IMG/VR virus record: IMGVR_UViG_3300049846_000628
Span: 1-64,000 of that record
Reading direction: 5' to 3' (one strand)
Length of the DNA stretch: 64,000 nucleotides
This document shows, in pieces, positions 1,415 through 58,592 of the stretch; position 1 is the first letter of the stretch; each line of letters begins with the position of its first letter. The notes below the pieces were generated by a model. The model made no database searches. It saw only the letters and a program-made list of their open reading frames with translations, and was not told the DNA's origin. The position numbers were made by a program, and so were the translations under genes.

Positions 1415-3268
1415 TTATTCTCCTCCTAACGCTAGGATAAATGGTGTCATTGTTGAGAACAAACTCTTCGAATAGAACGTTCCAGAAATTGTTCCGGTTG
1501 TTTGATTAATTACTACACCATCACCAATTCTAAAATTACCAGATTGATCTGTGCTTGTAAAAACAACTAGACCACCATTTCTCATATCAATTTCATTATC
1601 TTGAATTGGAACACCACCTTGAGCGGGAAGAGCAGAATTAATATTAGTTCCGGAACCAATGTATTCAAAAGAATGACCAGATGCTAATACTCTACTTTGC
1701 TTGAAGAATGGAACAGTAAATCCAATACCAACCACATAAGGAACATTATCATTCACTGTAATCGTACAAATTCCAGATGAAACTGGTGTTGAACTTAATA
1801 TTGAATAATATGTTGGAAGTAATTGTAAAGTAGCCGTTGCTATATTTATTCCAACATCAGGTCCAGCAATTGTAACTGTTGGAGGTACTGTATATCCTCT
1901 ACCACTAGATACAACTTCAATTGCTGTTACAGATCCATTTTTAACTTCTGCAACCGCTGTAGCTTGAATGCCCCAGTCAGTTGATGGTGCAGAAATTGTA
2001 ACGACTGGACTCGAATTATATCCACTTCCACCAGAAGTTACTTGAATTTTACCAAGAGTGTAGTAAAGATTATCAAAATAAACAACTTGCCCATCGAAAG
2101 GTCTTACAACATCAATCTTTACAGTTCCACCAGAGACATAAGTATGTGGAAGTGTTGATGGTCCAACATTCACAACAAATTGATTTGCTGCTGGAACTGA
2201 TTGAACTTCAAATACATATCCAAAATTTCCACTTGGATAAGTTACAAGCGTTGGACCTGAAGGGCAACTGAATTGCAGTCCAGCAATTGTAACTCCCATT
2301 CCAACTTGGAAGTTATGATTTGATGAAGTTGTAATTGTAGTTACACCACTTGCACTATCATAAACAGCATTTGAAACATTATAAGTCGGTACGTTTAAAT
2401 TAACAACAAACGTATCAGTATTTGCCGATGCCGTTTCTGTTATAATTCCAGTGTATTTTCTTGGACCAACACCATCAGCAACAAGACCATAATTACCAAA
2501 GGAAGCATTAGAGTTGGTTAAGTCACAAGCACCACCAGATCCACAGAAGACGGCAGTGTCTGGGCAGATTGTGAAGAGTGAAACTAATTGAGCGTATCCT
2601 TCGTTTGTAATCGAAACTCCAATACCACCCTGATTATATTGAGTGTAGGAATCAAGGACCATTGACTTGGTAGGTCCGATTGAATATTTTCCATCAACTT
2701 TCATTCCGACACTATTTGGAATAAAGTTAGTGCAGTTCTGAATATAAGGTGATTGATTATTGTAAACTGGTTTATTTGGATTAAATGCAAAGATAGCACC
2801 TGTGTTTGCCGAACCTACAAAAGACATTTCAGCAATGTAATTTCCATTACCAACATAAAAAAGGTCTCCTTGATTTTGTGGAGTAACGGAGACCTCTCTT
2901 AAACTATCACCAACAATACTAACTTGATTAGGAATTTGAATTGGATTATTTTCTACATAAGATCCAGCACTAACTCTAATAACGGAACCTGCTGTTGAGA
3001 TTGCGACTGCTCCTGCGATGGTTGCTTTGGCGTCTCCGAGTTTGAGTCCTGTGTTTGTATCTTTTCCGTCTTTTGTGACATAAATTACATTGGTTACAGT
3101 TACACCAGCAGCAACACGAACAACTTCCGATCCAATACCTACTCTATTTCTTACAGCATAGAGTTCAGCATCATTTAAGTTTAAAGCTAATTCACCGTAT
3201 TGTAGTGCGCCTGCTGCTGGTACTTTTCCAGGAACAGCAGATCTCTTAATCCTGATCGGAGTAGCCAT
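1415..3268 (-). CDS. Tail fibre/baseplate-associated protein (617 aa)
   Basis: N-terminal IRIKRSAVPGKVP..LQYGELALN fibre motif, beta-helix-like region, GSGY..P.VTI repeats. Confidence 0.7.
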   Translation of the reverse strand: MATPIRIKRSAVPGKVPAAGALQYGELALNLNDAELYAVRNRVGIGSEVVRVAAGVTVTNVIYVTKDGKDTNTGLKLGDAKATIAGAVAISTAGSVIRVSAGSYVENNPIQIPNQVSIVGDSLREVSVTPQNQGDLFYVGNGNYIAEMSFVGSANTGAIFAFNPNKPVYNNQSPYIQNCTNFIPNSVGMKVDGKYSIGPTKSMVLDSYTQYNQGGIGVSITNEGYAQLVSLFTICPDTAVFCGSGGACDLTNSNASFGNYGLVADGVGPRKYTGIITETASANTDTFVVNLNVPTYNVSNAVYDSASGVTTITTSSNHNFQVGMGVTIAGLQFSCPSGPTLVTYPSGNFGYVFEVQSVPAANQFVVNVGPSTLPHTYVSGGTVKIDVVRPFDGQVVYFDNLYYTLGKIQVTSGGSGYNSSPVVTISAPSTDWGIQATAVAEVKNGSVTAIEVVSSGRGYTVPPTVTIAGPDVGINIATATLQLLPTYYSILSSTPVSSGICTITVNDNVPYVVGIGFTVPFFKQSRVLASGHSFEYIGSGTNINSALPAQGGVPIQDNEIDMRNGGLVVFTSTDQSGNFRIGDGVVINQTTGTISGTFYSKSLFSTMTPFILALGGE

Positions 3269-3329
3269 CTATGATATTCGGTATTTACCAGAAGAAGCAG
3301 TATTTACTGCCTTTCATTTATTTATTTAT

Positions 3330-3701
3330 TCAAGATGCGTTATTGCGTCTTGGACGATAATTAAATAAATTCTTTGGTGGATCTGGTTTCATCCATTCTT
3401 CTATCTTATCAAATCTCTCTTCACTATAAAAGTCTTGTTGCACATACCATAGTTTCCAGTGCTCGTGACCCTTTGACTGGTTACAATCATGGCAGCAGCA
3501 TAATACGTTTTTTGTAACGTCTACACCTCCTTTTGACTGTGGAATAATGTGATCAATTGTGAGGTTCTCTTCAGACCCACAATAAGCACATTGATGATTC
3601 CACTGTTCTTTTATATGTTGCCTCCACATTCGTTTCGCCTCCCCAGAACTTGTTGCTTGTAAATGAAACAAGTATTCCTTCGGAGAATGTAGAGGTCCCA
3701 T
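3330..3701 (-). CDS. HNH endonuclease
   Basis: CAYCG...LTIDHIIPQSKGG...NVLCCCHDCN motif. Confidence 0.9.
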   Translation of the reverse strand: MGPLHSPKEYLFHLQATSSGEAKRMWRQHIKEQWNHQCAYCGSEENLTIDHIIPQSKGGVDVTKNVLCCCHDCNQSKGHEHWKLWYVQQDFYSEERFDKIEEWMKPDPPKNLFNYRPRRNNAS

Positions 3702-3724
3702 AAGTTACTGCGACTTATGATTAT

Positions 3725-4039
3725 TTATTTGATGATTACAGGTTCTCCTTGACCTTCTGGAAGTTTAATCTGAGGTAGTTGATTAATTTTATCAACCATC
3801 CATTCTTCCTGATGCTGCTTATAAGGTTCTGTATTGATTGCTATTTCATTTGATGGGAGTGCTTTGGGCATCTCAATATCAATCACTGGACTCATCAGTG
3901 TTTTGTTTTTTACAATTTCACGATTTGGTCCATCCAGATGCATCATCATTCTTGCATCTTCAAAACTACCACAATCACAAATTTTTTTATGAGTTCTTCT
4001 TTCTCTTACTATGAAATTCTCTTCGTTATACTTTTTCAT
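3725..4039 (-). CDS. Hypothetical protein
   Basis: ORF track 3725..4060; probable ATG at 4039 (MKKYNEENF). Confidence 0.6.
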   Translation of the reverse strand: MKKYNEENFIVRERRTHKKICDCGSFEDARMMMHLDGPNREIVKNKTLMSPVIDIEMPKALPSNEIAINTEPYKQHQEEWMVDKINQLPQIKLPEGQGEPVIIK

Positions 4040-4148
4040 CTTTTTGTTTCTTTTGTTCATTATAAGACACTTGGGGTTTTCTGTAAAGTTGTGGCCAAGT
4101 ATCTCTGATAATTTCTGTGAGTTTATATGGTGTTTCTGAAGTGATCAT
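4026..4148 (-). CDS. Small hypothetical protein (40 aa, MITSETPYKLTEIIRDTWPQLY...)
   Basis: Manual translation; ATGA overlap with upstream ORF. Confidence 0.5.
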   Translation of the reverse strand: MITSETPYKLTEIIRDTWPQLYRKPQVSYNEQKKQKDEKV

Positions 4149-4219
4149 AAATCTTGCAATATCGATAATATAAACATAAAGATTCCAAATGCTATGAATG
4201 AGAAGAGCATTAAGAACAT
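4145..4219 (-). CDS. Tiny hydrophobic peptide (24 aa, MFLMLFSFIAFGIFMFILSILQDL)
   Basis: Manual translation; single TM helix; coupled to next ORF. Confidence 0.4.
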   Translation of the reverse strand: MFLMLFSFIAFGIFMFILSILQDL

Positions 4220-4248
4220 AAAAAAAGGAGTTCGGAGAACTCCCTTAT
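4220..4248 (-). terminator. Intrinsic terminator downstream of psbD
   Basis: GGGAGTTC-TCC-GAACTCCT hairpin followed by a T run on the minus strand. Confidence 0.8.
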
Positions 4249-4253
4249 TTATT

Positions 4254-5315
4254 TTAGAGTGCGTTGCCTCGTGGAAGAACCTCCTCTGGGAACACAAAGT
4301 TCTCATGAGGTTGATCTACTGGAGCCATCCACGCTCTAAGACCCTCATTAAGGAGGATATTCTTCGTGTAGAACGTTTCAAACTCCGGATCCTCAGCGGC
4401 ACGGATCTCTTGACTTACAAAGTCGTAAGCACGAAGATTAAGGGCAAGACCAATGATACCAATGCTGGAAGTCCAAAGACCCATAACTGGTACAAAAAGC
4501 ATAAAGAAGTGCAACCAACGCTTGTTACTAAAAGCAATACCGAAGATCTGAGACCAGAATCTGTTAGCAGTAACCATTGAGTAGGTTTCTTCTTCTTGAG
4601 TTGGTTCAAAAGCCTTGAAAGTGTTCGCCTGCTCACTATCCTCATACAGTGTGTTTTCTACGGTTGCTCCGTGAATCGCACAGAGTAGTGCTCCACCCAG
4701 TATACCAGCAACTCCCATCATATGGAAGGGGTTGAGGGTCCAGTTGTGGAAACCTTGTAGGAACAGCAGAAACCTGAAGATAGCAGCAACACCAAATGAA
4801 GGTGCAAAGAACCAACTGGACTGACCCAGTGGATACATCAGGAACACGCTGACGAATACAGCGATGGGTCCAGAGAAAGCAATAGCGTTATAAGGACGAA
4901 TACCAACCAGTCGTGAAATCTCAAACTGGCGAAGCATAAATCCAATCAGGCTGAAAGCCCCGTGGAGCGCCACAAAAGTCCAGAGTCCCCCAAGTTGGCA
5001 CCACCTGACGAAATCCCCCTGAGACTCAGGACCCCAAAGTAGAAGAAGAGAATGACCCATAGAATCTGCGGGGGTTGATACTGCGGCTGTTAGCACATTA
5101 CAACCTTCTAAAAAACTTGAAGCAATACCGTGTGTATACCACGATGTCGTAAATGTAATGCCAGTCAACCAACCACCAAGAGCAAGATAGGCACAAGGTA
5201 TAAAAAGTAATCCAGACCATCCAATAAACACAAACCTATCTCGTTTCAACCAATCATCAACTAGGTCAAATAAACCTCGTCGTTGATTTTGTAAAGAAAT
5301 TGTAGATGAAACCAT
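4254..5315 (-). CDS. psbD: Photosystem II D2 protein
   Basis: DDWLKRDRF..., C-terminal [10 protein letters not shown]; true start ATG 5315 with GGAGG RBS (ORF track starts too early at 5372). Confidence 0.98.
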
Positions 5316-5381
5316 CAAACCTCCGTAATGATTTGTAATATTTATTTTATCACTTCTTAACAAAAGGGGCAATAGAGATTT

Positions 5382-6020
5382 CTACTTACTCTTCTTTTTC
5401 ATAGGAGTATCTGGGTCAAGTCCTCTTTCTATTCTATATTGTCTCCATCTTTCCTTTGCTCTTTCACTACATTTATTTTTACCTTCTTCTGTTTTAGGTC
5501 CTTGGACTTCTGGTTTTTTTCTATTTCCTTCATCCCAAGATTTCTTACAACCTTCACTTAATTTTTTCTTATGTTCTTCTGTTTTTGGAGCATAAGAAGC
5601 ACCAGGAATAAATGTCCCTTCTTGGAACTTTCTTTTTAGAGTTTCACTTCTTTTCTTATTACTTTCTTCTGTTTGAGGAACACCAGTTTTTGTTTTCCTC
5701 ATCTTTTCAACTGCTTCTGGTTTTTTAGGTTTTCCTAAATGAAGCAATCTTAATTTTTCCTTACTTTCTTCACTCATAGGTCCTCTATTTTCTCTTCCCC
5801 TTTCTTGTCCCAACTTCATAAGAAGAGAAATAACTTCTTCTTTACCTATCATACCAGATAGACCCATCCAAGCAATTCTATCCTCCTCCTTTCCATATTG
5901 TTCCCACAATTTTTTATGTGCCTCTGCGTGTTCCTCAATAGTCATTTCAACAAGATTAGAAGGGTCATCAGTTCCTCCCATATGTCTTGGAATAATATGA
6001 TGCTTGTGAGTAAGGGTCAT
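5382..6020 (-). CDS. HNH homing endonuclease with NUMOD3-like repeats
   Basis: HKHHIIPRHMGGTDDPSNLVEMTIEEHAEAH motif; basic MSEESKEKLR/KTEEHKKKLS repeats. Confidence 0.9.
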   Translation of the reverse strand: MTLTHKHHIIPRHMGGTDDPSNLVEMTIEEHAEAHKKLWEQYGKEEDRIAWMGLSGMIGKEEVISLLMKLGQERGRENRGPMSEESKEKLRLLHLGKPKKPEAVEKMRKTKTGVPQTEESNKKRSETLKRKFQEGTFIPGASYAPKTEEHKKKLSEGCKKSWDEGNRKKPEVQGPKTEEGKNKCSERAKERWRQYRIERGLDPDTPMKKKSK

Positions 6021-6127
6021 ATCAAGTATGTTTAACTAATACTATTTATACCAGTAGGTATACTAACAGGTATAAATGTTAAGAAATGCTGATACAAAAA
6101 AGAGACCTTCACAGGTCTCCTCTTTAC

Positions 6128-7521
6128 TCATTTTCTAAAAAGTCGTTCAAGGTTTTCTTTGTTCTTGAAGAGTTCATAGGATTTGATTTGCTCTCCATAA
6201 TACTTACTGATGTGCTTACACAAATCTTCTTCTTGTTTAGTAATATCCATATTATGTTTGTCTTTCAGGATAAGGATAGTTTCAATATCTTTGAGAGAAC
6301 TAAATGGAAGGTCTAAAAATTCTTCATAAGTCATTTTGCCCTCATAGCAGTAATCACAGCATCTCTTACTGTTTTTCCTTTTAGATGGTTCATACGAGAC
6401 CCACCATTCATAAAAACCCAATCACTTTCACCATTCATTTTGAGATTGTGTGCTTGGAACTGATTGAGTAGAAATTCAAGGATTTCTGTGTCTGTTGGTT
6501 GTTCAGTCATAGTTTATTCCTATAAGTGTATGTAATTTCTCCAGTTTCCTTATTCATCAGGTATGCCCAGTCAGTTGGAATTGTATCACAACAATCCCGA
6601 AACTTTTCAGTTGAAGATACTTCCATTACAATAGGAAGATTGTTAGAGTGATGATGAAAGATTGCTACAAGTTTCATTAGGTCACCTGATTTACGAAAGT
6701 TGGAACTTCACCACAAATCTTATTTGCCTCAGTATCATTCACACCATAAGATTTCCTACATTCTATCACAATCTCATAAGATTTCAAGAACATCTCTCTG
6801 TCCTTTTGAGTATTGTAAGTGTTTAGTAGTTCCATGGAAAGGAAATAACCAGTGACGATGAGAAGTGGAATGATGAGAGTAAAGATAAAGAGTTTCATTT
6901 CATTCATAGTAGGACATATCATAACTACCTTCATTATAACCCATTTGAAAGACTTCTTGGGCAAACTTCACAAAGGCATCAAAGTTTCCAGAATACTCCC
7001 AACCATCATTCTCATCCCAATCTTCTTCAAAGTGTTCTTTTACAAGTTTGAGGACTTCTTCATCTAAAATCATTTGAGTGCCTCCAATTCAGTAGCAATA
7101 CTCAAAATTGCCTCACGAATTTCGTCATTACGACCTTCCATTCCTGCGTCGTATTCTTTGTCCCCATAAAAACACCTATAATCGTCGGGGGCAACATTAT
7201 CAGCAAGAACACGAAGGGCAGAGGCAAATCCATCACGAATTCTTCCTCCGTGAGAAAATACTTCATCAGCAGCATCTATGATTGCTTGTGCTTTGGGAGA
7301 AAGGTCAGTCATCAGGCATCCTCCAAACGAATGTACTTTTCAAATAATCCTCTCATATCATAAAAATACGATCGTGCCCTATCAAGAACAGCAGTATCAT
7401 AATCTTCTTGTGTGGGTTCCTCTTCCATTTCCATATCCTTCCAAACTTCCAAGAAATCTTCAACAGACATATGGTATTCCAGAGGAATGTATGCGATTTT
7501 GGGAATGATTGAGTTAGTCAT
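6128..7521 (-). CDS. Run of ~7 small hypothetical early-type genes (cargo between psbD copies): 6128..6334, ~6331..6510, ~6507..6675, 6677..6907, ~6900..7072, 7070..7312, 7312..7521
   Basis: Abutting ORFs with ATGA/TAATG overlaps, from ORF track and manual reading; no recognisable families. Confidence 0.6.
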
Positions 7522-7699
7522 CGGTTTGGTTGCTTATGAGAATATTATACCATCAAAAAAGGCACCTGCGAAGTGCCCTTGTTCCAGTTTAGAAAGTGTC
7601 TTTTATATTTTTACCTATTATCAGTTTGTTCTCTGTATCTCTGTAAATCTCTAAACAATCCATTCACACCAATAAAGATTAGATACAATCCCAAAAAGG

Positions 7700-7807
7700 T
7701 CATACAGAAGTCCTCACGGAATCTAAGAGGTTTTGTTTAAGCCAGTCATCAAGGACATCGAACCAACCTCTCTGTGAAATGGGCGGTGAAAGTGTTGAAG
7801 AAGTCAT
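7700..7807 (-). pseudogene. psbD: Orphan 5' fragment of psbD (24 D2 codons, then 11 unrelated codons and a stop)
   Basis: MTSSTLSPPISQRGWFDVLDDWLK|QNLLDSVRTSV*; GGAGG RBS and own promoter. Confidence 0.9.
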
Positions 7808-7827
7808 AACCTCCAATCGTATTTCTC

Positions 7828-7862
7828 ATATTTATCTTAACATTCCTTAACAAAGAAGTCAA
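7828..7862 (-). promoter_or_regulatory. Original psbD promoter (sigma70-like plus late-like)
   Basis: TTGACT-17-TAAGAT overlapping GATAAATA; GTTAAGGA-AT-GTTAAGAT direct repeat. Confidence 0.7.
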
Positions 7863-7981
7863 CCCCAATAGATGACTCCAAGAGTGAAGAAAAGGAATAT
7901 AAGAATAGTGAATACCATAAGACCTACACCTAACCAGTTTACCCAGTTAGGCATAGGTTCGTGCTGAGGATTATGAGACAT
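7859..7981 (-). CDS. Small membrane protein (40 aa, MSHNPQHEPMPNWVNWLGVGLMVFTILIFLFFTLGVIYWG)
   Basis: Manual translation; start overlaps the end of the GIY-YIG gene. Confidence 0.6.
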   Translation of the reverse strand: MSHNPQHEPMPNWVNWLGVGLMVFTILIFLFFTLGVIYWG

Positions 7982-8645
7982 TGGTTTTGTGTTTTTGTTT
8001 TCTATATTTCCAATTTTGGTTTCCTTTTTTTGCTTCGCTTAATTTTTTTCTAGTTTCTTCTGATGGTGTTTTGCCTTTATGTGCTTCACTCATTTTCTTT
8101 TTGGTTTCATCGGATAATTTTTTACCTTTCATATTCTGATTACCTTTTTGTGCTTCACCAACTTTTTGTTTAGTTTCATCAGAAAGTTTTCTACCAAGAT
8201 TCCAAGTATTTCCCATCATTCTCTGCCTTATTTTATCTTTATGTTCCTCCGTTAATTTCATTCCTTTTCTTTTTTCACTTATTTTTTGTTTTTGTTCTTC
8301 CGTCATTTTTTTACCATAGTTGGGATTTTTTTCACCAACTCTCATTTCACTTAATTTTTTTCGTGTCTCTTCATTTACCAAAACACCAGAAGCACCTTCA
8401 CCACCATTAGTTCTGTTGCGAAGAATACCAGTTCCCAAATCCTTCCTACCAAATACATCAATCATATAGATTTCGTGTTTAAATGCTTCTTCTTCAGTTA
8501 AGTTTTTCTTCAAAAATATTATTCTAGATTTATCTTTTGGTGGTCTTATATCACCATTCATTTTATTATAAATTCTTTTTCCTTTTCCCTTTCCAATATA
8601 ATAAGGAGTTTTATCCTCTCGCAAATAAGCGTAAGTGTAATACAT
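7971..8645 (-). CDS. GIY-YIG homing endonuclease with NUMOD3 repeats
   Basis: YYTYAYLREDKTPYYIGKG..., repeated SDETKKKMSEAHKG. Confidence 0.92.
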   Translation of the reverse strand: MYYTYAYLREDKTPYYIGKGKGKRIYNKMNGDIRPPKDKSRIIFLKKNLTEEEAFKHEIYMIDVFGRKDLGTGILRNRTNGGEGASGVLVNEETRKKLSEMRVGEKNPNYGKKMTEEQKQKISEKRKGMKLTEEHKDKIRQRMMGNTWNLGRKLSDETKQKVGEAQKGNQNMKGKKLSDETKKKMSEAHKGKTPSEETRKKLSEAKKGNQNWKYRKQKHKTNVS

Positions 8646-8758
8646 TTCTACTCTGTTATGGTTCGCAATAATATTTATAATACATTATAGCAGAAAAGGT
8701 GCCCGAAGACACCTTTTCACCTGATAGATGCGAACCACACAGGTATTAGTATTTATAT

Positions 8759-8786
8759 AAAAAAAGGAACCCCGAAGAGTTCCTTA
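8759..8786 (-). terminator. psbA terminator
   Basis: AAGGAAC...GTTCCTT hairpin followed by a T run. Confidence 0.75.
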
Positions 8787-8798
8787 ACTTTATTGAAA

Positions 8799-10139
8799 TT
8801 ATCCTACAGTCGGTGCGGTGAGAGCAACAGGAGTGCTTTCAGCAGCAGCAAGGTCAAGAGGGAAATTGTGCAATTGTGTTATCGTAAAGACTCTTTATTC
8901 TTTACTTCTTACTGTCGCCAGTAAGTTCAGACTATCTCTTCATCCTTATGTTTATTAAGGAGTCGGGCATTCGTGGGTAGATTATTGTTGGGACTCACTA
9001 CCTAGTCGTTAGACCTTTCAGAAAACTTAAACCCTTTCTGACTTGGTACGGGATTGTCTCATAGAGAGTTTCCCCGTTTAACCCGATTTTTCTAATGCCT
9101 ATTACTAGGCAACAACACCAACAATTCTAGCGTTGCGCTCGTGCATTACCTCCATTCCCAGTCCAGCACGGTTGAGAACATCAGCCCAGGTGTTAATAAC
9201 TTTACCCTGACTATCAACGATAGACTGGTTGAAGTTGAAACCATTCAGGTTGAATGCCATCGTAGAAACACCAAGAGCGGTGAACCAGATGCCTACAACG
9301 GGCCAGGCAGCAAGGAAGAAGTGCAGCGAACGGGAGTTATTAAAGGAAGCATATTGAAAAATAAGGCGTCCGAAATAACCATGAGCAGCAACGATGTTAT
9401 AAGTCTCTTCTTCTTGACCGAACTTGTAACCATAGTTCTGTGACTCGTTCTCGGTGGTTTCACGAACCAGTGAGGAAGTAACCAGAGAACCGTGCATAGC
9501 ACTGAACAGAGAACCACCGAACACACCAGCAACTCCAAGCATATGGAAGGGGTGCATCAGGATGTTGTGCTCTGCCTGGAACACAAGCATGTAGTTGAAC
9601 GTACCAGAGATACCCAGAGGCATCGCATCAGAGAAAGAACCTTGACCGAAAGGATAGACAAGGAACACCGCACTCGCAGCGGCAACAGGTGCAGAGTAGG
9701 CAACGCAGATCCAAGGACGCATACCCAGACGGTAGGAAAGTTCCCACTCACGACCCATATAAGCATAGATGCCGATGAGGAAGTGGAAGACTACCAGTTG
9801 GAAAGGTCCACCGTTGTAAAGCCACTCATCTAGGGAAGCAGCTTCCCAGATGGGGTAAAAGTGCAGTCCAATAGCATTGGACGAAGGAATCACAGCACCA
9901 GAGATGATGTTGTTTCCGTACATGAGTGAACCAGCAACGGGTTCACGGATTCCATCGATGTCCACAGGAGGAGCAGCGATGAATGCAACGATAAAGCAGA
10001 TTGTTGCAGCGAGTAGACAAGGCACCATCAATACACCAAACCACCCGACATACAAACGATTATCGGTGCTGGTGATCCAGTTACAAAATTGATCCCAAAT
10101 ATTTGATTGTGATTGTTGACGTGAAAGTGTAGCAGTCAT
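8799..10139 (-). CDS. psbA: Photosystem II D1 protein, spliced: exon 1 10139..9129, exon 2 8870..8799 (360 aa)
   Basis: MTATLSRQQ...HERNA / [23 protein letters not shown]; E130-type (GREWELS). Confidence 0.97.
8871..9128 (-). mobile_element. Group I self-splicing intron (258 nt, no ORF) in psbA
   Basis: Exon ends in U, intron ends in G; P1 AACGCU/GGUGUU with U.G pair; P10 AAUUGU/ACAAUU; P7 GACUA/UAGUC; removal restores HERNA-HNFP. Confidence 0.95.
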
Positions 10140-10270
10140 TTGTTTAAAAAGGGTAAGTAAAAGTTCGGGGGAACGAACAGTTGTAAGTATCTCCCACAGC
10201 ACCCTCCACTGTGGGTATAAGAGACGTATTTTACATGGATAGTCTCGGTAAGGAGTATTAGTCCCTTTTC
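10140..10270 (-). ncRNA. Structured psbA 5' leader (possibly PhotoRC-II-like motif)
   Basis: Hairpins GAGAC...GTCTC and CCCACAG-TGGAGGGTG-CTGTGGG; motif name from recollection only. Confidence 0.5.
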
Positions 10271-10282
10271 TCCATGGTCAAT

Positions 10283-10353
10283 GTTACGAAACATTAAAGA
10301 TCCGTTACATTTGTTTACCTATTTATCATAGCACTTCATGAAGCAGAAGTCAA
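10283..10353 (-). promoter_or_regulatory. psbA promoter with HLR1-like boxes
   Basis: TTGACT(10353-10348)-17-TATGAT(10330-10325); GTTACATT-TG-TTTACCTA at 10304-10321 (+). Confidence 0.65.
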
Positions 10354-10835
10354 GTGGTGTATTGATTAATGCCTCTTATGTTTCCACCTCTTTGCTCACA
10401 CCCTTTCTTTGGTCCTGATTTGAGGTGTAGTTCATAACCAAACTTTGAGCATTCACGAATAGCTCTTTTGACTTGATGTTCTTTTAACCCAAGTAAGTCG
10501 GCAACTTCTTTTCTTGATAGTCCTGACTGACGATATTTAAGAATAGAAAGTTCTTGTTGTGTTGGTTCAGTTTTCTTTGGAGGTTTTCCTCTTTTTTCAG
10601 TTGAGTTTCCTTTACTTTTCTTTGCCCAGTTGATTGCTTGTTTATCGTGAATAATTTTGTGAGTTGCTGGATGATAAACATATAAGTGCTCTGGAATGTT
10701 TCTACCACCTTCACATCTTGGTGGATTATGGTGAACATCTATATTTTCCATTTGCTCATCAGTAAGTCCATAGTGCTGTTGAGCAACTTTACGATAGTTA
10801 TGTTTATCAGTAGAGAGAACAATAGCAGAACACAT
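10350..10835 (-). CDS. HNH homing endonuclease with C-terminal HTH
   Basis: IDVHHNPPRCEGGRNIPEHLYVYHPATHKIIH; probable ATG 10835 with GGAG RBS. Confidence 0.85.
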   Translation of the reverse strand: MCSAIVLSTDKHNYRKVAQQHYGLTDEQMENIDVHHNPPRCEGGRNIPEHLYVYHPATHKIIHDKQAINWAKKSKGNSTEKRGKPPKKTEPTQQELSILKYRQSGLSRKEVADLLGLKEHQVKRAIRECSKFGYELHLKSGPKKGCEQRGGNIRGINQYTT

Positions 10836-10892
10836 AAAAAACTCCAAACCTACTATTATTTAGGTAGGTTTGGAGTTGTAATGAAGTTTATG

Positions 10893-11132
10893 TTAGTGTT
10901 TTGTAACAATAAAAGACTCTCTCCAATTATATAAACTTTCTTCTTTCTTTTCAACTTCTATTTCATCATATATTTCTGGTAACTTATTTTCTTCTTGGAC
11001 AACAAAAACTTCAGAGTCACTTTCTCCTTCAAGGACTCCTGTGTTTTTAAGTTCTTCATCAAGTTTTTTTATCTTTTCATCCAAATCTTTTGAAGGTTTA
11101 GAATACTTGATAGTCTTTTTAAAAATTCCCAT
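10893..11132 (-). CDS. Hypothetical acidic protein, possibly truncated
   Basis: ORF track; late-promoter-like TAAATA upstream. Confidence 0.45.
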   Translation of the reverse strand: MGIFKKTIKYSKPSKDLDEKIKKLDEELKNTGVLEGESDSEVFVVQEENKLPEIYDEIEVEKKEESLYNWRESFIVTKH

Positions 11133-56314: not shown

Positions 56315-57619
56315 CTACTTACGCTTTTTTCTATACTTATTTATGAAATCAATTCCGTATGCTACACCACCAGGTTGTAAATTCTCTTTACCAGTTCCAA
56401 CAGCACCTGGAGTTTGCTTAGCAGCATACTTAAAATATCCTGTTGTTCCAATCAAAGTATTTGGTTTTCCAGGTTCACGATACATTCTGCTCATTTTTGT
56501 CTCAGTATATTCTCTCAAATCTTTAATCCAAGACTTGAACATCATACCAGACTCGCTTACACAAATCAGATAGTTAGTTCCTCTACGAATGATACGACCA
56601 ACCATACCAGTGTTGAGATTTTCTACTACCTCACCAATTCTAAAAATAGATTCTTGCAAGTAATTTTCACGAAGATTTTTAAAGTCAAACTTAGGTGCAA
56701 TCTCCCAAATATCCCATCCTTCTTTTACGCTCATCGCACCACGAAGAATATTGAATAATTCTTTTGCTTCTGCTGGTTTTACTTCAGGAGGAAGACCTGA
56801 TCTAAAAGTTTTAAAATCATTTTCAGCGGCAGCAAGTCTCATCCTTGATGCAGACATTCCTTCTACACCTTGAGCATCAGGATCTCTGTCTCCAGCAGAT
56901 ACAACTTCAATATTATCAAAATTATAAAGTTGACCATTATATTGGTTGGAAAGTTTTTCAAATTCTTTAACTCTATCACCACCACCAACAATTCTCACAC
57001 CAGCATAACCATTATTATGAGCCATCTTCAATACATCAAAGATAGTCTTTGTGTTTGCATCATTAACGATATTCCCAGCGTGATTGGGATAAAACTTTTG
57101 CATATAATTAATCTTAGTATCAGGATCAAGAGGATTCTTCTTCTTATCCTGACTACGTGATGGGAAGATTAAATATTGCCCATCTTTATCTTGTGATGCT
57201 GCTGCAGCCGCTACATCCATCAACTGCTGATGCCCAATCGTTGGTGGATTAAAACGACCAAAAGCAACTGTAAGAGTTCCTTTCGTTTTAGGAACTGGTA
57301 AATACTGAGCAGGTGGTTGTTCCTCTGCTGCTGCCTGTTGTTCAGGGGCAGGTGCTTGTTGTTGAACTTCTGGTTGTTGAACTAATGCTGGATCAGTATA
57401 TCCTGGAGAAGCAATTGTCTTTTCCTTCTCAGTTTGTGCTGGATCTTTTCCTCCAACTCTTTGGCGCTTATTATAAAACTTAAGTTTCCCACCTTCAGTT
57501 TTCGCTACAAACTCTCCCTGACGGTCATACCAACCGCCGTGACCATCACCAACAAGACCAAGACGCTGTGCTTGCTGAGAGGCAGATGCTTCTGCTATAA
57601 ATTGGAAAAAACTTTTCAT
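56315..57619 (-). CDS. Cytidyltransferase-like protein
   Basis: FGRFNPPTIGH; MSASRMR. Confidence 0.88.
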   Translation of the reverse strand: MKSFFQFIAEASASQQAQRLGLVGDGHGGWYDRQGEFVAKTEGGKLKFYNKRQRVGGKDPAQTEKEKTIASPGYTDPALVQQPEVQQQAPAPEQQAAAEEQPPAQYLPVPKTKGTLTVAFGRFNPPTIGHQQLMDVAAAAASQDKDGQYLIFPSRSQDKKKNPLDPDTKINYMQKFYPNHAGNIVNDANTKTIFDVLKMAHNNGYAGVRIVGGGDRVKEFEKLSNQYNGQLYNFDNIEVVSAGDRDPDAQGVEGMSASRMRLAAAENDFKTFRSGLPPEVKPAEAKELFNILRGAMSVKEGWDIWEIAPKFDFKNLRENYLQESIFRIGEVVENLNTGMVGRIIRRGTNYLICVSESGMMFKSWIKDLREYTETKMSRMYREPGKPNTLIGTTGYFKYAAKQTPGAVGTGKENLQPGGVAYGIDFINKYRKKRK

Positions 57620-57668
57620 TATTTACTTAATATTGTGTAACCAATTACTCCTTGTAATTATATTTATC

Positions 57669-58592
57669 CTACACAAATCTTGCTACTGTTCGTCCCCCAA
57701 GTGGATTTATAGTTATTCTAGCACCTTTTATGCCGTGATCACTTCTATCTCCCTTATAAACAGCCAATAATATTGGTTCGTACCCACCAGTTATCCTTTC
57801 ACCGTTGTTCATTTTGTGACCAGAAGATGTAAGTTCATAATATGTTCCTCTCTTTATAATATTCAATGTTCCCTGCATTGTTACATCTACATTATTTTCA
57901 CCAACAGGTCCACCATAATCTTTACCATAGACTGCTAGTTTTTTCAACATTTCATCTTGAATTTTTCTACCAACTGTCGTTGCTGGTGGAATTCCATTTG
58001 GAAACATTTCACGCAATGTGTTTATGAACGCTTGAGTTTCTGGGTGATTATAAATCGTGGGTTCAACTCTCAATGAAGTTCCTGCCCATTGTTGAAACCC
58101 TCTTGGTCCAGATCCTGCCTTATGAGATACGTGCCCAACATATCCATTCTGACCTAAGAAATGAAAATCACACTTTGGAGTTCCTGGAGTGCTTTCACAA
58201 AGTCCAGCCTGATATGTATTTTTTCCAACCTTTAAGGGTATAAAATCACTACCAGAAGAATCCATTATCTTCTTTAACTGCGTATTTAATCTTGCAATTT
58301 CAGCATCTTCTTGTGCCGTTGTTGCCTGTGTTCTACCAGAAAATTCAGAATCTTTGTATAGTTCTGTAAGTCTTATATTCTGACCATTTTCAGTAAGCAG
58401 AACAATAGATTGACCCTGCTTAAATTTATTAAAACTAGTAATATTGGTCAACTCTTTAAGAATTGATTTACTTAACTTTATACCCTTTCCATTTCCATTA
58501 TCTAATTTAAATTCTTTACCGTTACGGATTCTAGACAGAAAAATATTAAAATTATTTCTTTTCCCAAGTTCTGCTACTGATAAAGAAGCCAT
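57669..58592 (-). CDS. Hypothetical protein, possibly restriction-like PD-(D/E)xK nuclease
   Basis: PKCDF...VSHK..GFQQW motif. Confidence 0.45.
   Translation of the reverse strand: MASLSVAELGKRNNFNIFLSRIRNGKEFKLDNGNGKGIKLSKSILKELTNITSFNKFKQGQSIVLLTENGQNIRLTELYKDSEFSGRTQATTAQEDAEIARLNTQLKKIMDSSGSDFIPLKVGKNTYQAGLCESTPGTPKCDFHFLGQNGYVGHVSHKAGSGPRGFQQWAGTSLRVEPTIYNHPETQAFINTLREMFPNGIPPATTVGRKIQDEMLKKLAVYGKDYGGPVGENNVDVTMQGTLNIIKRGTYYELTSSGHKMNNGERITGGYEPILLAVYKGDRSDHGIKGARITINPLGGRTVARFV

What the first reader, a model, noticed from the sequence alone, without database searches (positions are those of the whole stretch)
4254..7862. psbD split by a 2.4-kb HNH+cargo cassette that supplies its own promoter and a recoded psbD 5' end
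Seen: a canonical psbD start (MTSSTLSPPISQRGWFDVLDDWLK, 7807-7736) with intact promoter and RBS breaks off after codon 24. It is followed by an early-promoter module, ~7 small ORFs and an HNH gene, then a new promoter/RBS and a full psbD whose first ~85 codons are AT-rich and divergent (14/24 aa identical to the orphan). Known: free-standing T4 homing endonucleases spread by co-converting neighbouring sequence, and cleavage-resistant alleles exist. Inference: this is a mobile element that inserts inside an essential-function gene and repairs it by carrying a resistant replacement end, without splicing, while ferrying cargo genes.
Basis: partly seen in the sequence, partly recalled or inferred. 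Interest (0 to 1): 0.9.

Follow-up and report, generated by a model that had tools for sequence, protein, structure and literature searches.

The report
HNH homing cassette displacing psbD start
A selfish nuclease gene sitting just upstream of a cyanophage photosystem gene (psbD) travels with its own, probably nuclease-proof, copy of the gene's first ~77 codons, and in this phage lineage the original promoter and first 22-28 codons are stranded 2.4 kb upstream, mirroring at the 5' end an arrangement so far described in fungal mitochondria.

Summary
A psbD promoter, RBS and first 24 codons (7862-7736) are cut off from an intact psbD (5315-4254) by eight small ORFs and an HNH gene (6020-5382). 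The intact gene's first ~77 codons are AT-rich and abnormally divergent.

Comparison with about 100 related metagenomic loci shows the following:
- **HNH family position.** This HNH(+NUMOD3) gene family sits directly upstream of psbD in many uncultured cyanomyoviruses.
- **Mobile unit.** The hairpin, HNH, psbD promoter and psbD codons 1-77 move together. They are 0/1066 nt different from a genome whose flanks differ by 8-22%.
- **Origin of the two 5' ends.** The stranded 5' end is 92-93% identical to intact HNH-less alleles. The replacement 5' end clusters only with HNH-linked alleles.
- **Age of the junction.** The same junction occurs in five diverged lineages, always with a conserved 30-aa ORF, but with different cargo.
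- **Orphan-less context.** The same HNH module also occurs with no orphan.

The best reading is a free-standing homing endonuclease with a co-converted resistant target end. A one-sided repair once displaced the native 5' end. The closest precedents are T4 intronless homing and fungal mitochondrial endonuclease ORFs that carry duplicated gene termini. This is a new variant of a known kind. Nuclease activity is untested.

The parts
7834..7862 (-). native psbD promoter-like site (TTGACT-17-TAAGAT) now driving the orphan and orf30
   Evidence: The motif TTGTTAAGGAATGTTAAGATAAATA is identical to the one upstream of intact psbD in L047 and L062.
7700..7807 (-). orphan psbD 5' end: 24 PsbD codons (7807-7736, FDVLDDW type), then 11 unrelated codons and a stop
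7717..7741 (-). junction zone between psbD sequence and cassette. The cassette side (TTAGATTCCGTGAGGA...) is shared by all orphan-bearing lineages. The psbD side ends at codon 22, 24 or 28.
   Evidence: alignment A3; pattern scan
7611..7703 (-). orf30, a 30-aa hydrophobic peptide with GAGGA 9 nt upstream. Its start overlaps the orphan stop (ATGA). It is 93-100% conserved in all orphan-bearing lineages.
   Evidence: absent from isolate phages
7544..7580 (-). terminator hairpin plus T-run, overlapping an early-type promoter (TTCGCA-17-TATAAT)
6128..7521 (-). seven small cargo ORFs (69, 80, 57, 95, 56, 59 and 97 aa) of unknown function. Homologues lie in small-ORF arrays elsewhere in other cyanophages. 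Content differs between lineages.
6043..6119 (-). left end of the HNH module: GAGACC..GGTCTC-T-run hairpin (6119-6102) and TATAAATA late-promoter-like box (6050-6043)
   Evidence: The L195/L196 identity tract starts inside this hairpin.
5382..6020 (-). HNH homing endonuclease gene (212 aa) with an N-terminal HNH motif and C-terminal NUMOD3-like repeats
5316..5372 (-). psbD promoter/RBS of the HNH-linked allele (TTGCCC-17-TAAAAT; GGAGG), homologous to 7808-7862
5086..6151 (-). identity island with 0 mismatches in 1066 nt against L001/L002. It covers the hairpin, HNH, promoter and psbD codons 1-77.
4254..5315 (-). intact mosaic psbD (353 aa). Codons 1-77 are the HNH-linked, AT-rich, FDLVDDW type. 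The remainder is an ordinary cyanophage allele nearest to L062/L074.

Best explanation
The HNH ORF is a free-standing homing endonuclease gene of a family that lives immediately upstream of psbD in T4-like cyanophages.

Inferred mechanism. In a mixed infection the enzyme cuts HNH-less psbD alleles in the conserved stretch around codons 17-28. The break is repaired from the HNH-bearing genome. Repair copies the HNH module together with the donor's psbD promoter and first ~60-80 codons. Those codons carry synonymous codon-family switches (Leu CTT to TTG/TTA, Arg CGC to AGR) and the FDVL-to-FDL[LV] change at the presumed site, so the new copy is immune. This is classical 'intronless homing' with co-conversion.

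Origin of the orphan (inferred). In an ancestor of this lineage, the right side of one such repair was resolved by homology inside psbD. The left side was joined illegitimately, at a few bases of microhomology, to DNA upstream of orf30 in the donor. The recipient's own promoter, RBS and first 22-28 codons were therefore left as an orphan. That orphan now transcribes orf30 and whatever small ORFs have since accumulated between two hairpin/promoter modules.

Later history. The orphan junction was made once and inherited. HNH modules have since been swapped in and out by further homing. Their left ends resolve in a common terminator hairpin.
For: Shown:
- HNH catalytic motif and homing-endonuclease family hits; NUMOD3 in homologues.
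- Homologues (38-100% aa) lie directly upstream of psbD in at least 12 independent loci.
- Window vs L001: 0/1066 mismatches over hairpin to psbD codon 77. The left flank is 92.5% identical and the rest of psbD 72-95%.
- L195 vs L196: 1/933 mismatches over the same module, with unrelated left flanks.
- The 5' tree (nt 1-231) groups the window with HNH-linked alleles (SH-aLRT 99-100). The 3' tree places it next to HNH-less L062/L074.
- All HNH-linked alleles have FDL[LV]DDW, against 4 of 54 HNH-less alleles (Fisher p=2.5e-5 on de-duplicated alleles, not phylogenetically independent).
- The shared codon-family switches at nt 67-69 and 79-81 flank the orphan breakpoint at nt 66-84.
- The orphan is 92-93% identical to intact HNH-less alleles.
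- One cassette-side junction is shared by five lineages whose HNH proteins are only 65-100% identical.
- Every orphan-bearing locus found has the HNH.

Inferred: cleavage, the target position, immunity, and the one-sided repair.
Against: - No biochemical data exist. The window's own HNH scores only just above the Pfam threshold, and its NUMOD3 repeats are degenerate.
- Four HNH-less loci (L028, L041/42, L061, L089) also carry FDLL-type AT-rich 5' ends. This could be HEG loss, but it shows the allele type is not strictly tied to the gene.
- L007's orphan keeps sensitive-type sequence through codon 28, so the target must extend further or lie elsewhere.
- The native context of orf30, meaning the putative donor left flank, was not found. 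The illegitimate join is therefore reconstructed, not observed.
- A single origin cannot be separated from repeated re-insertion, because both predict one junction.
Confidence: 0.55

Rival explanations
1. The whole block (orf30, cargo, HNH, promoter, recoded 5' end) is a discrete element that repeatedly inserts inside naive psbD genes. The orphan is regenerated each time, because the donor's orphan serves as the left homology arm abutting the cut site.
For: - Window vs L001: the element interior is nearly identical. There are 6 mismatches in 834 nt from orphan codon 6 to orf57, and 0/1066 for the HNH module. Outside, divergence rises sharply: 19 mismatches in 57 nt of orf40, psbA 85%, the rest of psbD about 83%.
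- Orphan alleles differ between lineages in the way intact local alleles do: SPPISQ, SQPIQQ, SQPISQ.
- The junction shifts between codons 22, 24 and 28, as expected from heteroduplex trimming.
- Fungal mORFs work this way (PMC3630166).
Against: - Cargo is different in each lineage, and only orf30 is constant.
- In the other pairs (window vs L007, L192, L194) only the HNH module, or nothing, is an identity island.
- The HNH module also moves alone into orphan-less contexts.
- Ordinary flank recombination explains the orphan allele diversity equally well.
Confidence: 0.25
2. The HNH gene played no part in making the orphan. An ordinary illegitimate recombination, or promoter/stem-loop-mediated module shuffling typical of T4-type hyperplastic regions, dropped a small-ORF block into psbD. 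The HNH module arrived separately.
For: - The cargo ORFs belong to small-ORF arrays found elsewhere in related genomes.
- Hairpin/promoter modules bound the cargo.
- HNH modules are demonstrably exchanged independently of the orphan.
Against: - Such an insertion would have destroyed psbD unless a replacement 5' end arrived in the same event.
- The replacement end is exactly the HNH-linked tract.
- The breakpoint (nt 66-84) lies within the region that carries the HNH-associated codon switches.
- All orphan loci carry the HNH, against roughly 10% of psbD loci overall.
Confidence: 0.12
3. A tandem duplication of the psbD 5' region occurred within one genome, followed by divergence of the copies and later insertions between them.
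For: Both copies include the same ~60 nt of promoter/RBS and are collinear.
Against: - The copies are only about 71% identical. Each is much closer to alleles in other genomes: the orphan is 92-93% identical to HNH-less loci, and the functional 5' end is 97-100% identical to other HNH-linked loci.
- The 5' and 3' trees are incongruent.
Confidence: 0.03
4. The structure is an assembly chimera, or an intron or translational-bypass arrangement in which the orphan is still exon 1 of psbD.
For: The data are metagenomic. Some sister contigs end at a branch point in the cargo (L003/L004 at L001 position 5543).
Against: - The orphan-to-psbD structure was assembled independently in contigs from at least six different metagenomes, with 75-100% identity among them.
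- L106 spans the L001 branch point.
- The downstream psbD has its own start, RBS and complete N-terminus.
- Rfam finds no intron in 3000-11000 except the one in psbA.
Confidence: 0.03

Closest known systems
Intronless homing by free-standing T4 endonucleases (SegF/gene 56, SegG/gene 32, SegE, MobE; Belle 2002 and Liu 2003 as cited in PMC3037559 and PMC10448857)
   Same: - A free-standing nuclease gene lies between genes.
- It cuts the nuclease-less allele of a neighbouring conserved gene at some distance from its own insertion point.
- It spreads with co-conversion of flanking polymorphisms that make the carrier immune.
- It shows patchy distribution among close relatives.
   Different: - The target is an auxiliary photosynthesis gene (psbD).
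- In this lineage the event left a displaced promoter plus 5' fragment and kilobases of other ORFs between the fragment and the repaired gene.
- Activity here is inferred only.
Fungal mitochondrial mobile endonuclease ORFs with duplicated gene termini (Allomyces macrogynus atp6; Glomus atp6, atp9, cox2, nad3; PMC3630166)
   Same: - An endonuclease ORF is inserted in a conserved gene.
- It carries a foreign, divergent copy of the gene's end that restores the reading frame without splicing.
- The native end survives next to it and is much more similar to relatives' alleles (there 91-98% vs 64-81%; here 92-93% vs 67-71%).
   Different: - The arrangement is a mirror image. The 5' end with its promoter is replaced, not the 3' end.
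- The nuclease is a separately transcribed HNH, not an in-frame LAGLIDADG/GIY-YIG.
- Extra ORFs sit inside the element.
- The host is a virus, not an organelle.
- The same nuclease module also exists in a purely intergenic form.
F-CphI and the psbA intron of cyanophage S-PM2 (Zeng et al. 2009, cited in PMC3037559; annotation)
   Same: Both involve the psbA-psbD region of cyanomyoviruses and a free-standing nuclease next to a photosystem gene that it targets.
   Different: - F-CphI is an EndoVII-type enzyme aimed at the psbA intron insertion site.
- The present gene is HNH+NUMOD3, lies next to psbD, and is associated with recoding rather than an intron.
Genes split by nuclease-gene cassettes without splicing (Aeh1 nrdA/mobE; split gp43 of T4-related phages; from my own knowledge, not checked here)
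   Same: A nuclease cassette lies inside a conserved phage gene, and function is retained without RNA or protein splicing.
   Different: In those cases the two gene pieces both remain functional and assemble as subunits. Here one piece is redundant, because a complete replacement gene is supplied.
HEG islands / nuclease genes at recombination boundaries (Barth, Dunham and Seed 2023, PMC10448857)
   Same: High-identity tracts are bounded by or centred on nuclease genes next to conserved genes, and HEG domains are shuffled (compare L194).
   Different: The tract here is about 1 kb with one nuclease, and it includes a recoded target segment. Partial target duplication is not described there.

Membership tests
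HNH free-standing homing endonuclease | HNH (beta-beta-alpha-metal) catalytic motif | tested here: met
   Pfam PF01844 scores 22.4 bits against a cutoff of 21.4. H, N and H positions are invariant in the alignment of four homologues. PHROG 655 'homing endonuclease', E=4e-19.
HNH free-standing homing endonuclease | modular DNA-binding region (NUMOD-type repeats) | tested here: inconclusive
   NUMOD3 is significant in homologues L040 and L029 (E=1e-16). It is not detected in the window's protein, although the repeats align.
HNH free-standing homing endonuclease | sporadic presence at one conserved locus among close relatives | tested here: met
   The gene is present directly upstream of psbD in about 8 of 80 nearest psbD loci plus 9 metagenomic loci, and absent in the rest.
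HNH free-standing homing endonuclease | co-conversion tract / identity island including flanking target sequence | tested here: met
   0/1066 mismatches, 1/933, and incongruent 5' and 3' trees.
HNH free-standing homing endonuclease | site-specific cleavage of the nuclease-less allele and resistance of the carrier allele | not testable with these tools
   Only indirect evidence is available: the FDVL vs FDL[LV] change and the Leu/Arg codon-family switches at nt 51-81.
Endonuclease ORF with duplicated gene terminus (fungal mORF type) | nuclease ORF lies between a carried copy and the native copy of one end of the target gene | tested here: met
   The order is orphan, then HNH, then the replacement 5' end. 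It is mirrored to the 5' end.
Endonuclease ORF with duplicated gene terminus (fungal mORF type) | native remnant is closer to relatives' alleles than the carried copy, and the carried copy is foreign | tested here: met
   The orphan is 92-93% identical to HNH-less alleles. The carried 5' end is 67-68% identical to them.
Endonuclease ORF with duplicated gene terminus (fungal mORF type) | the whole unit, including the duplicate, is what inserts into empty alleles | tested here: inconclusive
   An identity island covers the whole element in one pair. However, the nuclease module also moves alone, and the cargo varies.
Group I/II intron or intein in psbD | self-splicing RNA or protein element that restores one continuous gene product | tested here: not met
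   There is no Rfam intron between 4254 and 7862. The downstream psbD is complete with its own start.
T4-type promoter/stem-loop mobile regulatory cassettes | short hairpin-plus-promoter modules at the borders of exchanged ORF blocks | tested here: inconclusive
   Hairpin and promoter lie at 7580-7544, and hairpin and TATAAATA at 6119-6043. The L195/L196 left junction lies in a hairpin common after psbA. Exchange through them is inferred.

The most novel reading that the evidence does not exclude
The orphan is not a scar but a working part. It serves as the left homology arm that abuts the cut site. In a mixed infection, the whole block (orf30, any cargo, HNH, promoter, nuclease-proof 5' end) would then be copied into the middle of a naive psbD, and the junction would be regenerated each time. 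That would make this the first splicing-free, gene-internal, cargo-carrying homing element described in a virus. The displaced psbD promoter would be co-opted to express the conserved 30-aa membrane peptide.
Probability: 0.3. Interest if true: 0.75.

Novelty: new variant of a known kind. Interest (0 to 1): 0.6.

Why it matters
Mosaic psbA/psbD genes in cyanophages have usually been put down to general recombination between phages and hosts. Here a specific selfish nuclease appears to drive the mosaicism at the psbD 5' end. It recodes about 230 nt and changes more than a dozen residues of the D2 N-terminus and first helix.

The locus also shows how a homing event that lacks homology on one side can do three things at once:
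- duplicate part of its target;
- strand a strong photosystem promoter;
- open a landing pad where small ORFs accumulate.

This is a concrete route from nuclease activity to new phage gene content.

The finding extends the 'carried replacement terminus' solution, known from fungal mitochondria, to viruses and to the 5' end of a gene. It also offers a candidate new specificity (HNH+NUMOD3, with a target in a highly conserved psbD sequence) that can be tested with simple cleavage assays.

Tried and rejected
- **Isolate phages.** No isolate phage in the 50,697-record collection carries the cassette, orf30 or the orphan. Only fragments match: orf69-orf80 is 86% identical to S-SRM01 at another locus, and the HNH N-terminus is 81% identical to S-SKS1.
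- **Native context of orf30.** Exact-pattern scans for the junction and for orf30 in IMG/VR returned only the same phage group, so the native donor context of orf30 was not found.
- **Annotation of small ORFs.** Pfam and PHROGs gave nothing for the small ORFs.
- **RNA structure.** Folding of the orf30 region showed no structure beyond the terminator hairpin (z=0.14).
- **HNH structure relatives.** A PDB sequence search for the HNH gave only marginal HNH-motif hits.
- **L002 as donor.** I first treated L002 (HNH-psbD at the end of a long small-ORF array, with no psbA within 16 kb) as a possible donor configuration or a chimera. It stays unresolved, but it matters less now, because L193 and L196 independently show orphan-less contexts.
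- **Breakpoint.** I first placed the breakpoint at codon 28 from L007 and took the window's CAAAACCTC as decay. L192 and L194 showed that this string is the common cassette-side sequence, so the junction is best described as codon 22-28.
- **Rejected models.** Tandem duplication, intron or bypass, and assembly artefact were considered and rejected (see rivals).
Full report
**What is in the window**

All relevant genes are on the minus strand. From upstream to downstream they are:
- psbA (10202-8808), interrupted by a group I intron;
- a GIY-YIG/NUMOD3 nuclease gene (8645-7971);
- a 40-aa membrane ORF (7981-7859);
- a psbD promoter-like site, RBS and ATG (7862-7807), followed by 24 codons of PsbD. 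The reading frame then leaves psbD and stops at 7700;
- a 30-aa ORF (orf30, 7703-7611) whose ATG overlaps that stop;
- a terminator hairpin fused to a promoter (7580-7544);
- seven further small ORFs (7521-6128) with no family hits;
- a second hairpin (6119-6102) and a TATAAATA box;
- a 212-aa HNH ORF (6020-5382);
- a second psbD promoter/RBS and a complete 353-aa psbD (5315-4254).

The window is part of IMG/VR contig 3300049846_000628.

**The two psbD starts are homologous but have different origins**

The duplicated segment is about 60 nt of promoter/RBS plus 22-28 codons. The two copies are about 71% identical.

The orphan copy is 86.7% identical to the psbD start of isolate S-PM2. It is 92-93% identical to the starts of intact, HNH-less psbD genes in loci L047, L062/L074 and L065/67/73.

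The functional gene's nt 1-231 are only 67-68% identical to 67 HNH-less alleles, which are 81% identical to one another. From nt 231 onward the gene is average, at 84-86%.

Separate trees give the same answer:
- On nt 1-231 the window groups with HNH-linked alleles (SH-aLRT 99-100).
- On nt 301-1059 its nearest relatives are HNH-less L062/L074, the same loci that best match the orphan.

The orphan is therefore the displaced native 5' end of the gene whose 3' two-thirds are still in use.

**The HNH gene and the replacement 5' end travel together**

Against L001/L002 (the same HNH protein), the window has no mismatch in 1066 nt (window 6151-5086). This stretch covers the hairpin, TATAAATA, HNH, promoter and psbD codons 1-77. 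To its left identity is 92.5%. To its right it is 72-95% per 60-nt bin.

Against L007 the high-identity tract ends earlier.

L195 and L196 share the same module with 1 mismatch in 933 nt. Their left flanks are unrelated: an orf30-containing spacer in one, and the psbA terminator in the other. Their identity begins inside a GAGACC..GGTCTC-T-run hairpin, a terminator type that many loci carry after psbA. The short hairpin therefore probably serves as the left recombination site.

HNH homologues (38-100% aa) sit directly upstream of psbD in L029, L035, L039/40, L192-L197 and others.

**A sequence signature at the presumed target**

Every HNH-linked allele encodes FDL[LV]DDW where almost all others encode FDVLDDW (5/5 vs 4/54 de-duplicated alleles; Fisher p=2.5e-5, with a non-independence caveat).

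All of them also share two-base synonymous switches, Leu CTT to TTG/TTA at nt 67-69 and Arg CGC to AGR at nt 79-81. These positions are well conserved among HNH-less alleles.

The orphan breakpoint (nt 66-84) lies inside this stretch. I infer that the enzyme recognises or cuts around codons 17-30, and that these changes protect the carrier. None of this has been tested biochemically.

**The orphan junction is old and tied to orf30, not to the cargo**

The metagenome scan found the same arrangement, orphan then orf30 then HNH then psbD, in L192 (HNH 81% aa), L194 (65%), L190 and L189. In L195 the contig starts inside orf30.

The cassette-side junction sequence is the same in all of them. The psbD side ends at codon 22 (L192, L194), codon 24 (window, L189) or codon 28 (L007).

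orf30 is 93-100% conserved, more than the HNH gene. What lies between orf30 and the HNH differs:
- a 125-aa ORF in L192;
- a 148-aa ORF in L194, which elsewhere is an ordinary psbA-psbD spacer gene;
- one ORF in L007;
- seven ORFs in the window.

The window's cargo ORFs have homologues in small-ORF arrays at other genome positions in related phages.

For each of three HNH clades there is also an orphan-less counterpart: L002/L191, L193 and L196. All orphan-bearing loci found carry the HNH.

**Most likely mechanism**

Shown:
- a psbD-associated HNH gene family;
- a mobile unit that includes the target's 5' end;
- a displaced native 5' end with one shared junction.

Inferred:
- The enzyme cuts naive psbD.
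- Repair from the carrier copies the HNH plus a resistant 5' end.
- Once, the left side of such a repair was sealed without homology upstream of orf30 in a donor, which stranded the recipient's promoter and first codons.
- The orphan promoter now expresses orf30 and downstream ORFs.
- The two hairpin/promoter modules make the interval a landing pad for small ORFs.

It remains open whether the entire block now re-homes into naive psbD with the orphan as its left arm. One genome pair shows an identity island spanning the whole element with sharply diverged flanks. The other pairs do not.

**Comparison with known systems**

The behaviour matches T4 intronless homing (SegF, SegG, as cited in PMC3037559 and PMC10448857).

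The architecture matches, in mirror image, the fungal mitochondrial endonuclease ORFs that carry a foreign C-terminus and leave the native one behind (PMC3630166, which cites the Allomyces atp6 case).

F-CphI/psbA is the known neighbour in the same genomic region.

I found no paper in the held library that describes a psbD-directed nuclease or a displaced psbD start. The finding is a new variant of a known kind.

**Limits**

- All evidence is comparative and metagenomic.
- The nuclease's activity, target and the immunity of the recoded allele are untested.
- The donor context of orf30 is unknown.
- The L002 contig may be rearranged or chimeric.

Noticed in passing
window 8808-10202 (minus); intron about 9126-8871: psbA is interrupted after ...HERNA by a group I intron (Rfam RF00028, 64.8 bits, 9138-8908). 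Exon 2 (HNFPLDL...) starts at 8870. The site is the same as in S-PM2, but the intron sequence is not similar by blastn. The wider Rfam scan at E<=0.1 had missed it.
   Followed up: yes
window 9048-9080: 33 nt inside the psbA intron are 100% identical to unannotated DNA of phiKZ-like Pseudomonas phages (SL2, phi9_PA9; 12 records). This is probably a shared group I intron core element.
   Followed up: partly
window 7971-8645 (minus): A GIY-YIG + NUMOD3 free-standing nuclease gene occupies the slot after psbA where S-PM2 has the EndoVII-type F-CphI. Relatives have F-CphI-like ORFs (L192 6664-7092, L193, L028, L089) or a LAGLIDADG-like ORF (L194 6591-6986) there. Three nuclease families therefore rotate through one site.
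   Followed up: partly
window 10179-10286 (minus): PhotoRC-II RNA motif (RF01717, 52.8 bits) lies upstream of psbA, as is known for cyanophage photosystem genes.
   Followed up: no
window 3330-3701 (minus): A second, unrelated 123-aa HNH-type ORF lies about 550 nt downstream of psbD. It is conserved (47-94% aa) at that position in many related loci.
   Followed up: no
window 7611-7703; L192 7390-7482; L194 7307-7399: orf30, a 30-aa hydrophobic peptide, is better conserved than the nuclease next to it. It is present only in orphan-bearing contigs and absent from all isolate phages. Its function is unknown.
   Followed up: partly
L194 8001-8585 vs window 5382-6020: The HNH genes are themselves mosaic. 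The L194 nuclease domain is only about 66% nt identical to the window's, while the C-terminal DNA-binding half is nearly the same. This suggests domain shuffling among nuclease genes.
   Followed up: partly
L002/L109/L191 (contig 3300024513_000016): An HNH-psbD module 100% identical to L001's sits at the end of a >16-kb array of small ORFs, with no psbA nearby. L003 and L004 contigs end exactly at the point where L001 and L002 diverge. This is either a real rearranged genome or an assembly join through shared small ORFs.
   Followed up: partly
window 7079-7521: orf69-orf80 are 86% nt identical to two hypothetical genes of Synechococcus phage S-SRM01, at an unrelated genome position (57583-58028) and with four copies or places in that record.
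   Followed up: no
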